Below the pieces are notes generated by a model. The model was given only the letters and a program-made list of their open reading frames with translations. It was not told the origin of the DNA and made no database searches. The translations under genes and the position numbers were made by a program. From NCBI GenBank assembly GCA_937625935.1, contig OW569347.1:558001-622000 (forward strand): 64,000 nucleotides of DNA, read 5' to 3'. The stretch's first letter is position 1, and each line of letters starts with the position of its first letter. Positions 39,089-40,367 of this stretch are shown piece after piece. This DNA is from Tetramitus jugosus (lineage: Eukaryota; Protista; Heterolobosea).

Positions 39089-40000
39089 ATGAGTATGTTT
39101 ATTAAGAAAAGAGATCACACTCTCAAGAAATCAGAGAATGAAAATGACCTGCCACTTCGAAGAGAGAATTACATGGACAAATTGAAGAGTAACACGAAGT
39201 TTATTCCAGTAGACTCTCTCTTTAATGTTACTTCAAAGCAAACAACAGCAAATAGGCATTCCTCTAGATTGATCACATCACCTCATCTTACCATACCTCG
39301 TTTACCATTGAACAAGTTGTTATTGCTGGCTGAGATTCAAGATGAGTCGCATCGACAAGTGGATCAGATTCAACAACGAGGATATATAAGTACATATAGA
39401 TCTGGTAGAAGAGTTAAGATTTCTGCACGGAGATCTGAACAAATAACGGCGACCCATCGAGCGAGAAAGGAACATATCGTTTTGGATAAGATACCTGAAT
39501 CGTTGCTGCATCATGTAATGAGTTACTTACTATGTCGGCACACCCAATTATCATTTTATCAGCTCATTATTCATGGTATAGATCCTCCATCTCATCAGAA
39601 TAGTGAATCCCATGAATTTACATTGTTTCGATTGAGAGAGATTTCAAAGTCATTCCACCGAGCGGTGATGTCTCGGTTAAACATGATTGAATGGGTGTTG
39701 TCCAGAACTTATTTGAGAGAATTCGGTAGTTTCGATGACAGTGTTTGGGTTACAGCTCCACTAGCCAAAATTGTACTCGTAAGACGAGAAAATCCTTCGT
39801 TTCAACTGGATCTAAGTAAGAAAGGAGAGTGGGTGTGGTTGCATGGAGCCAGCTTGGTCAAATTTCATCCACTCAGTCGAGACAAAGGATTTTCCTTCCA
39901 ATTTTCGCCCAAAGAAAAGTCATCTCTCCCTATCATGACCATTAAGGTGGCGGTCTACTGTCCATCAAGCCATAATAAAAACATTATGGTTTCCCGATAA
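39089..40000 (+). CDS. Hypothetical protein with an F-box-like motif; about the last 21 codons lie inside the Fanzor-derived element
   Basis: LDKIPESLLHHVMSYL...LREISKSF is F-box-like; stop TAA 39998-40000 falls within the structured element. Confidence 0.5.
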   Translation: MSMFIKKRDHTLKKSENENDLPLRRENYMDKLKSNTKFIPVDSLFNVTSKQTTANRHSSRLITSPHLTIPRLPLNKLLLLAEIQDESHRQVDQIQQRGYISTYRSGRRVKISARRSEQITATHRARKEHIVLDKIPESLLHHVMSYLLCRHTQLSFYQLIIHGIDPPSHQNSESHEFTLFRLREISKSFHRAVMSRLNMIEWVLSRTYLREFGSFDDSVWVTAPLAKIVLVRRENPSFQLDLSKKGEWVWLHGASLVKFHPLSRDKGFSFQFSPKEKSSLPIMTIKVAVYCPSSHNKNIMVSR

Positions 40001-40050
40001 GACACCTTAACGCTCCTACATAATCGGGATTTACATAGCAGCTTGATGGA
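39937..40050 (-). ncRNA. Candidate Fanzor omegaRNA scaffold
   Basis: Six complementary pairs within 114 nt: 39961-70/40041-50 (10 bp), 39970-76/39983-89 (7 bp), 39992-98/40023-29 (7 bp), 39942-49/40003-10 (8 bp), 40016-23/40031-38 (8 bp incl. 2 G-U on the minus strand only), 39937-40/39952-55 (4 bp). It overlaps the 3' end of the Fanzor ORF, as TnpB-family omegaRNAs do. Confidence 0.65.
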
Positions 40051-40250
40051 GTGAGCCTTGGAGGTGTTCCACCATTTTGATTAATTCTTTTGCGACCTTT
40101 TTCTTCCTCTTGCCTCTTGAAGGCATCGGGACGTGACTGTCCATCCATTTCTGTTCTCAGTAGATGGAGCATGTTCTTGGCCGCATTGATGTCTCTGTTG
40201 TGAGTCACTAAACATTTAGTGGTTGCACACTGTTTAACTCCTCGAACGAC
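39937..40250 (-). mobile_element. Truncated Fanzor (TnpB-like) element: C-terminal Zn-finger half and RuvC-III plus right end
   Basis: Translation VRGVKQCATTKCLVTHNRDINAAKNMLHLL...GQSRPDAFKR matches the Fanzor1/TnpB C-terminal signature C..C...RDxNAAxN...RP..F.R; RuvC-I/II and REC/WED parts are absent. Confidence 0.8.
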
Positions 40251-40294
40251 AGAGACATTCAACTTCGATGTCCACCCCAACAAGAAGCAAAAAT

Positions 40295-40367
40295 CTCCCA
40301 TACCGGGACTCGAACCCGGGTCTCATGGGTGAGAGCCATGTATCCTAACCAACTAGACTATATGGGA
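40295..40367 (-). tRNA. trnE-CUC: tRNA-Glu (CTC)
   Basis: Reverse complement TCCCATA...CATGG-CTCTCAC-CCATG...CCGGG-TTCGAGT-CCCGG-TATGGGA-G, followed by T5. Confidence 0.95.

What the first reader, a model, noticed from the sequence alone, without database searches (positions are those of the whole stretch)
39937..40250. Fanzor/TnpB remnant carrying an apparently intact, pseudoknot-capable omegaRNA
Seen: the minus-strand frame encodes VRGVKQC-ATTK-C...NRDINAAKN...RPDAFKR. Overlapping its last codons and stop (39984-86) are six complementary helices in 114 nt: a 10-bp enclosing stem (39961-70/40041-50), a 7-bp hairpin (39970-89), an 8-bp hairpin (40016-38) whose two G-U pairs form only on the minus strand, and a 4-bp terminal hairpin (39937-55). 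Two further pairings involve hairpin loops (UCCCGAU/AUCGGGA and UUAAGGUG/CACCUUAA) and would make pseudoknots. Known: this is the C-terminal signature of Fanzor1/TnpB RNA-guided nucleases, and their omegaRNA is encoded at the element's 3' end, often overlapping the ORF end, with the flanking DNA as guide. Inference: the protein is truncated but the scaffold is undamaged. This fits a non-autonomous, stand-alone omegaRNA locus used in trans by a full-length Fanzor elsewhere, i.e. a eukaryotic RNA-guided system with an unusually elaborate scaffold.
Basis: partly seen in the sequence, partly recalled or inferred. Interest (0 to 1): 0.88.

Follow-up and report, generated by a model that had tools for sequence, protein, structure and literature searches.

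The report
Fanzor1 transposon stump with guide scaffold
This is the last 320 bases of a young, roughly 40-copy amoeba transposon carrying an RNA-guided DNA cutter (Fanzor1): the protein is gone, the guide-RNA scaffold is intact and seems to keep a pseudoknot that Fanzor1 RNAs are said to lack, and sister copies bear the scars expected if the cutter re-opens emptied sites.

Summary
Confirmed as a Fanzor1 remnant. It is not shown to be a dedicated omegaRNA gene. Window 39946-40263(-) is the 3' end of a ~40-copy TIR transposon with TTAA target duplications; 19 copies keep an uninterrupted 628-649 aa Fanzor1 (SpuFz1 match E 4e-14). The remnant differs from a full copy by one SNP and a 7-nt frameshifting duplication, so its intact scaffold reflects youth, not selection.

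Divergent relatives correct the fold. It is a two-stem Fanzor1 scaffold: SL1, then a stem closing on the TTAA, with an apical hairpin. One pseudoknot (SL1 loop to inner strand) shows a compensatory change (~65%); papers say Fanzor1 lacks one.

An empty allele exists in metagenomes and is a perfect TTAA+15-nt target for this guide. Five sister copies duplicate TTAA plus 9-20 nt of their own guide at the broken left end, the footprint expected of cut-and-copy-back homing. This copy lacks that scar. Expression was not tested. The scan had already reported the family, the scars and the pseudoknot idea on other copies; the covariation test and this empty allele are added here.

The parts
39946..40263 (-). 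3' remnant (318 bp) of a Fanzor1-carrying TIR transposon; equals positions 2378-2688 of the 2.7-kb subfamily-A element plus a 7-nt duplication
   Evidence: one substitution and one 7-nt insertion against full-length copy L021
40031..40262 (-). last ~75 codons of the Fanzor1 ORF (second half of the zinc finger, NRD catalytic motif), frameshifted after RPDAFKR; parental stop at 40033-40031
40106..40119 (-). 7-nt tandem duplication (two copies) private to this copy; causes the frameshift
   Evidence: (table 4)
40012..40042 (-). omegaRNA stem-loop 1: 40042-40031 pairs with 40023-40012 (7-8 bp upper helix, central mismatch, 3-bp lower helix); loop 40030-40024
   Evidence: 10-11 of 12 pairs kept in three divergent lineages, with double-sided changes (A-U to G-C, U-A to C-G)
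39992..40029 (-). candidate pseudoknot helix: SL1 loop 40029-40024 with inner strand 39997-39992 (one unpaired loop base, 6 bp)
   Evidence: G-C to A-U double change in L052 and L060; 5-bp complement in L063 (weak)
39942..40010 (-). omegaRNA stem 2: 40010-40003 pairs with 39949-39942, closing on the TIR end and the TTAA duplication
   Evidence: the 6 terminal pairs are invariant in all 8 sequences (no covariation, so neither for nor against on their own)
39970..39989 (-). apical hairpin (SL3): 39989-39983 with 39976-39970
   Evidence: one-sided G-U changes, pairs kept
39946..39958 (-). right terminal inverted repeat (13 bp; left TIR of full copies starts GGTGGCGGTCTAC)
39942..39945 (.). TTAA target-site duplication (right copy); predicted TAM
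   Evidence: TTAA on both sides of full copies; single TTAA in the empty allele
39927..39941 (-). predicted 15-nt guide (host flank)
   Evidence: differs in every copy; matches the empty allele 15/15 directly after TTAA; no other genomic match within 1 mismatch, 2-mismatch matches at control level
40264..40279 (.). 16-nt filler at the left junction; the left TTAA and 44 nt of host flank are missing relative to the empty allele
40295..40367 (-). host tRNA-Glu(CTC), followed by a T5 tract (40293-40289); neighbour, not part of the element
   Evidence: present in the empty allele; no tRNA near 19 other copies
39089..40000 (+). host ORF of unknown function, interrupted at the TTAA: last ~32 residues replaced by 17 read from the element end
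   Evidence: intact 317-aa allele P0011, 92% identical; no Pfam hit

Best explanation
The stretch is a recently made, 5'-truncated copy of a transposase-less Fanzor1 TIR transposon with TTAA target duplications. In full copies the Fanzor1 protein binds an RNA made of the ~100-nt right-end scaffold plus ~15 nt of host flank (the guide), and cuts DNA where TTAA is followed by the guide sequence, i.e. the empty allele of the same locus; repair from the filled copy then restores the element (restorative homing). SHOWN: family, ends, intact catalytic motifs, scaffold fold with covariation, copy-specific guides, an empty allele that is a perfect target, scars in sister copies, strong excess of right-end-only copies. 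INFERRED: cutting, TAM = TTAA, expression, homing, and a transposase acting in trans (not found). This copy kept the right end and lost the left end, either because copying-in from the guide side aborted after ~320 nt and was joined to a trimmed left end with a filler (about 50%), or by deletion of a full insertion (about 50%). Its scaffold is intact because it is young; use in trans is possible but not shown. The scaffold is the Fanzor1 two-stem type with, probably (about 65%), an added pseudoknot from the SL1 loop to an inner strand of stem 2.
For: 42 DNA matches in the genome, sharp right end, unrelated flanks. 19 uninterrupted 628-649 aa ORFs, PF07282 E 8e-10, SpuFz1 8gkh E 4e-14, TDG, DPG, E541 and NRD motifs invariant. 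TIRs and TTAA TSD. Remnant equals the parent but for 1 SNP and a 7-nt duplication. Empty allele in ENA contig L069 and groundwater run X4. TTAA plus 9, 9, 11, 12 and 17-20 nt of own right flank duplicated at the left junction in 5 of 14 left-end-less copies, 0 of 20 copies with a left end; lengths stay within the published Fanzor1 cut positions (14-17 nt and up to 21 nt from the TAM, PMC10432273). About 16 right-end-only versus 2 left-end-only copies. Same nested fold in all lineages; pair counts beat shuffles (1/500 for percent paired, 3/500 for covariation) and all slid controls.
Against: This copy has no TAM+guide duplication, so homing is not shown for it. No RNA data (only contigs). No transposase found (uninformative). 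Covariation rests on 4 lineages; the pseudoknot double change may be one event, and the same inner strand can pair inside stem 2 instead. The empty allele comes from other strains, so the 44-nt difference could partly be strain polymorphism.
Confidence: 0.75

Rival explanations
1. Dedicated stand-alone (ghost) omegaRNA locus, expressed and used in trans, possibly from read-through of the upstream tRNA gene, so that the 320-bp stump homes into empty alleles with protein borrowed from full copies.
For: Scaffold identical to that of a full copy; many intact proteins in the genome; perfect target in the population; ghost omegaRNAs work with SpuFz1 (PMC10432273); co-oriented tRNA 31 nt upstream.
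Against: No sign of selection (too young); single locus, not a family with both TIRs like the Spu-1 ghosts; a T5 tract follows the tRNA and a U5 tract lies inside the scaffold, both expected to stop RNA polymerase III (sequence; general knowledge); the tRNA predates the insertion and no other copy has one.
Confidence: 0.15
2. Inert debris: an ordinary deletion or abortive-excision derivative; the Fanzor plays no part in the truncations, and the duplications in sister copies come from another process such as target-primed reverse transcription or aberrant transposition.
For: This copy has a plain deletion-plus-filler junction; 5' truncation with 9-20 nt duplications also typifies LINE-type insertion (general knowledge).
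Against: All five duplications start exactly at the TTAA; the inserts end at the TIR with no poly(A); scarred copies L032, L030 and L047 reach 0.6-2 kb upstream of the start codon (L032 begins 43 nt from the left end), which suits a DNA template. Abortive gap repair after plain excision would not duplicate flank beyond the TTAA (inference).
Confidence: 0.15
3. No pseudoknot: the inner strand 39997-39992 pairs within stem 2 (a long irregular rod as in SpuFz1) and the loop complementarity is incidental.
For: Nested MFE folds pair this strand with the 3' linker, with 9 Watson-Crick pairs in subfamily B; RNAalifold pairs three of its bases with the TIR; Fanzor1 RNAs are reported to lack a pseudoknot (PMC11832414, PMC10711439); the L063 match is at chance level (P 0.2).
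Against: Chance of the 6-bp match is 0.004-0.014 in this copy and 0.03-0.07 in two relatives (not independent); loop and strand change together G-C to A-U; the 3' linker is the least conserved part and its pairing differs in every lineage; opening the strand costs 3-6 kcal/mol against 9-13 gained before loop penalties in all but L063.
Confidence: 0.35

Closest known systems
Spizellomyces punctatus Fanzor1 (SpuFz1, Spu-1 element; PDB 8GKH; PMC10432273)
   Same: Only PDB relative (E 4e-14); ~640-aa single ORF between inverted repeats, no transposase inside; omegaRNA overlapping the ORF end, two stems then a flank-derived guide; partial copies and ORF-less loci in the same genome.
   Different: TTAA rather than TA duplication and CATA TAM; 13-bp GG..CC ends; ~100-nt scaffold with an apical hairpin and a candidate pseudoknot; this copy has one end only, whereas Spu-1 ghosts are a 134-copy family with both repeats; full copies here carry host cargo (Vps35 piece).
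Guillardia theta Fanzor1 (GtFz1; PMC10432273, PMC11423790)
   Same: TTAA TAM; 7-bp SL1; tertiary contacts within a longer scaffold.
   Different: GtFz1 contacts are SL2 to SL4, not from the SL1 loop; its loci are reported to lack inverted repeats; no PDB sequence match to it was returned.
TnpB (ISDra2, IS607) and Fanzor2 omegaRNA pseudoknot and restorative homing (PMC10711439, PMC11832414, PMC13565253)
   Same: Pseudoknot that uses the apical loop of stem-loop 1; cutting of the empty donor site followed by copy-back.
   Different: There the partner is the last ~5 nt before the guide; here those bases form stem 2 (the Fanzor1 state) and the candidate partner lies ~50 nt upstream. Homing is listed as shown for TnpB and IscB, not for Fanzors.
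Kolobok / piggyBac (TTAA-duplicating DNA transposons)
   Same: TTAA duplication (PMC13565253); GG..CC termini fit Kolobok (RR..YY) rather than piggyBac (own knowledge).
   Different: No transposase found in the elements or by PF20700 in the genome (control silent), so the carrier is not established; Kolobok is not in the review's list of Fanzor carriers.

Membership tests
Fanzor1 | TnpB-like RuvC plus zinc finger; homology to a characterised Fanzor1 | tested here: met
   full-length parent: PF07282 E 8e-10; SpuFz1 E 4e-14
Fanzor1 | DPG motif, rearranged catalytic Glu just before the zinc finger, final Asp | tested here: met
   D378-P-G, E541 (7 residues before C548), D592 invariant in alignment A1; only the last is retained in the window remnant
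Fanzor1 | TDG motif in the WED domain; length about 600-800 aa (PMC10711439) | tested here: met
   T327-D-G invariant; 628-649 aa
Fanzor1 | omegaRNA at the right end, TSD inside the scaffold as a paired stem, non-conserved flank as guide | tested here: met
   (predicted fold and conservation; not experimental)
Fanzor1 | No pseudoknot with the terminal bases before the guide | tested here: met
   terminal bases form the nested stem in all lineages; the candidate pseudoknot uses an inner strand instead
Fanzor1 | Expressed omegaRNA and RNA-guided DNA cleavage with a TAM | not testable with these tools
   only assembled contigs were available; scars are indirect evidence
Ghost (stand-alone) omegaRNA locus, Spu-1 type | Both inverted repeats kept, no ORF, multi-copy conserved family | tested here: not met
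   left end and left TTAA missing; unique junction; ORF tail still present
Ghost (stand-alone) omegaRNA locus, Spu-1 type | Scaffold intact and usable by the full-length protein | tested here: inconclusive
   last 125 nt identical to full copy L021; expression and loading not testable
Kolobok superfamily carrier | TTAA TSD with RR..YY termini | tested here: met
   termini rule from own knowledge
Kolobok superfamily carrier | Kolobok DDE transposase with the same TIRs | tested here: inconclusive
   none inside the elements; PF20700 search blank with silent control

The most novel reading that the evidence does not exclude
This Fanzor1 family uses a pseudoknotted omegaRNA (SL1 loop paired to an inner strand, a relocated form of the TnpB pseudoknot) and homes in vivo; aborted homing leaves right-end stumps such as this one, which remain active guide-only elements that borrow the protein and convert empty alleles.
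Probability: 0.2. Interest if true: 0.82.

Novelty: new variant of a known kind. Interest (0 to 1): 0.55.

Why it matters
What Fanzors do in their hosts is open: restorative homing is listed as shown for bacterial TnpB and IscB but not for Fanzors (PMC13565253). This genome gives about 40 copies with readable guides, an empty allele that is an exact target, and junction scars whose lengths fit the known cut positions, so the question can be tested directly in a culturable amoeba. A pseudoknot in a Fanzor1 omegaRNA would revise the stated rule that Fanzor1 lost it and matter for scaffold design. The window copy alone is a modest object, a young truncated copy.

Tried and rejected
tRNA-driven omegaRNA unit: rejected as a family feature, since only this copy has a tRNA, the tRNA predates the insertion and is followed by T5. 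10-bp enclosing stem and 4-bp terminal hairpin: rejected. A trans target elsewhere in the genome for this guide: none above control. Source of the 16-nt filler: unique in the genome at up to 3 mismatches over 24 nt; a 10-nt match to the right flank of copy L028 was noticed and left as probable chance. Rfam: only the tRNA. Viral contigs: no relative. Metagenome scan: 3 loci, none adding a scaffold. Closer relatives P0003, P0004 and P0159 have a different right end and could not be aligned. Transposase search by PF20700 was blank and uninformative. No paper links Fanzor and Tetramitus.

Full report
Setting. The window lies in a 26.35-Mb, 56-contig, gene-dense eukaryotic assembly. The size agrees with the heterolobosean amoeba Tetramitus jugosus (26.3 Mb, 52 chromosomes; PMC11106597). 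This identification rests on size only.

Observation. The peptide motifs are there and give a weak TnpB/Fanzor zinc-finger hit (PF07282, E 0.0014). The six complementarities are there too, in excess of chance: 4 Watson-Crick helices of 7 bp or more against 0.29 in shuffles, fold z -3.1.

What it belongs to. A 401-bp query finds 42 matches in the genome, most covering exactly 40263 to 39942. Conservation ends sharply at the TTAA at 39942 and every copy has a different flank. Nineteen copies have an uninterrupted 628-649 aa ORF. Its only PDB relative is SpuFz1 (E 4e-14), and the Fanzor1 marks named in PMC10711439 (TDG, DPG, rearranged Glu) are invariant. Full copies have terminal inverted repeats and a TTAA duplication, in two end types: A (2.7 kb and longer) and B (3.4-4 kb). 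They hold no transposase; many carry host cargo, including a Vps35 fragment. The window copy is the last 311 bp of a type-A element with one substitution and the 7-nt duplication. It is therefore very young, and an undamaged scaffold is what a neutral copy would show.

The empty allele. A metagenome contig (L069) encodes the uninterrupted 317-aa host ORF and shows a single TTAA at this site. A groundwater contig (run X4) joins 39945 to 40289 without the element. Against L069 the window allele has an exact right junction, but has lost the left TTAA and 44 nt of flank and gained a 16-nt filler. On the minus strand the empty allele reads TTAA followed by a 15/15 match to the predicted guide (39941-39927), so it is the natural target. 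The window's own allele is not a target, and no other site in the genome matches above control.

Scaffold. I compared this copy with subfamily B, an old in-genome copy (L052) and two metagenome relatives of 76% and 60% protein identity that end in the same TIR (L060, L063). All fold the same way when the flank is left out: SL1 (7-8 bp upper helix, a mismatch, a 3-bp lower helix), one linker base, then stem 2, which closes on the TIR end and the TTAA, with an apical hairpin. SL1 keeps 10-11 of 12 pairs through double-sided changes although the stop codon moves relative to it. For the whole model, 91.7% of cells pair (1/500 shuffles), the covariation score is reached by 3/500, and slid controls give 33-47%; relatedness inflates these figures. 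This matches the published Fanzor1 plan: a 7-bp SL1 (PMC11423790) and terminal bases with the TSD in a stem (PMC10711439).

Pseudoknot. The SL1 loop (40029-24) is complementary over 6 bp to 39997-92, leaving one loop base free, a usual H-type layout (own knowledge). In L052 and L060 both sides change together (G-C to A-U), possibly one event. L063 has a 5-bp A-U-rich match that is at chance level (P 0.2) and out of register. Chance for this copy is 0.004-0.014. The rival is pairing of the same strand inside stem 2, which is strongest in subfamily B. I put the pseudoknot at about 65%. Papers state that Fanzor1 RNAs lack the TnpB/Fanzor2 pseudoknot (PMC11832414, PMC10711439). That one uses the terminal bases; this one would use the same loop with another partner.

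Mechanism. Of 14 inspected copies without a left end, five (L027, L030, L032, L047, L053) have, at the broken left junction, TTAA plus 11, 9, 9, 12 and 17-20 nt (two mismatches) of their own right flank; none of 20 copies with a left end has more than 5 nt. This is what is expected if the nuclease cuts an empty allele 10-20 nt past the TAM, the right broken end copies the element in from the guide side, and copying aborts. Published Fanzor1 cuts lie 14-17 nt (non-target strand) and up to 21 nt (target strand) from the TAM (PMC10432273). Exact-TIR searches give about 16 right-end-only copies against 2 left-end-only (two-sided binomial p about 0.001 by hand; unknown left-end variants could inflate the count). 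The window copy has the same polarity but no duplication, so aborted copy-in with a trimmed left end and plain deletion of a full insertion are about equally likely for it. Cutting, TAM, expression and the transposase are inferred, not shown.

Use in trans. Ghost omegaRNA loci are known and work with SpuFz1 (PMC10432273). This copy fails the ghost definition (one end, single locus, ORF tail kept). It lacks the element's upstream region. The co-oriented tRNA-Glu ends 31 nt before it but is followed by T5, exists in the empty allele, and has no counterpart at 19 other copies. The runs available were contigs, whose depth over the element follows copy number, so expression was not tested. I give active use in trans about 15%.

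Earlier notes. Other agents of this scan had reported the family, Kolobok-like ends, empty alleles at other sites and the scars, and first readers had proposed pseudoknots at other copies. I had seen the family and the scars before opening those notes. The Kolobok reading came from them; I confirmed the ends but found no transposase.

Verdict. A real Fanzor1 remnant with a real scaffold; a new variant of a known kind. The value lies in the family (testable homing, possible pseudoknot) more than in this copy. Interest 0.55.

Noticed in passing
L030:229-426 (G000 C2) and L038/L036 cargo: The host sequence left of the L030 scar, including TTAA plus 9 nt, recurs (92% identical) as cargo inside copies L038 and L036, which have a variant left TIR. 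This suggests that a left-end-less copy gained a new left end and carried flank away, a route to cargo capture.
   Followed up: partly
L039:1401-2003; source G000:C22:83229-83909: A 200-aa Vps35 fragment (99% identical to the host gene) and other host pieces from C13 and C21 form patchwork cargo in the long elements.
   Followed up: partly
L048:733-1054 (G000 C8, ~461.4 kb): A ~320-bp internally deleted copy with an eroded left TIR and an intact scaffold; a better ghost-locus candidate than the window copy.
   Followed up: no
L061, L062, L071: Fanzor1 relatives of 62-73% identity from one metagenome end in a different terminus with a simpler two-stem scaffold; close proteins ride on different ends.
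   Followed up: partly
window 39089-40000 and L069:236-1189: In the empty allele the host ORF runs about 10 codons into the antisense strand of the tRNA-Glu gene before stopping; no Pfam match.
   Followed up: partly
window 40264-40273: Ten bases of the junction filler equal bases 2-11 of the right flank (guide) of copy L028; probably chance, unexplained.
   Followed up: partly
L035, L046, L047, L033: Several copies with intact ORFs have deletions in the omegaRNA scaffold and would need a scaffold from elsewhere or be guide-less.
   Followed up: no
window 39783-39945, run X2: A contig from a run of the same organism leaves the window sequence at 39945 with 38 further letters and shares a flank variant with the empty-allele strain; the empty allele may persist in that sample (letters not shown).
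   Followed up: no
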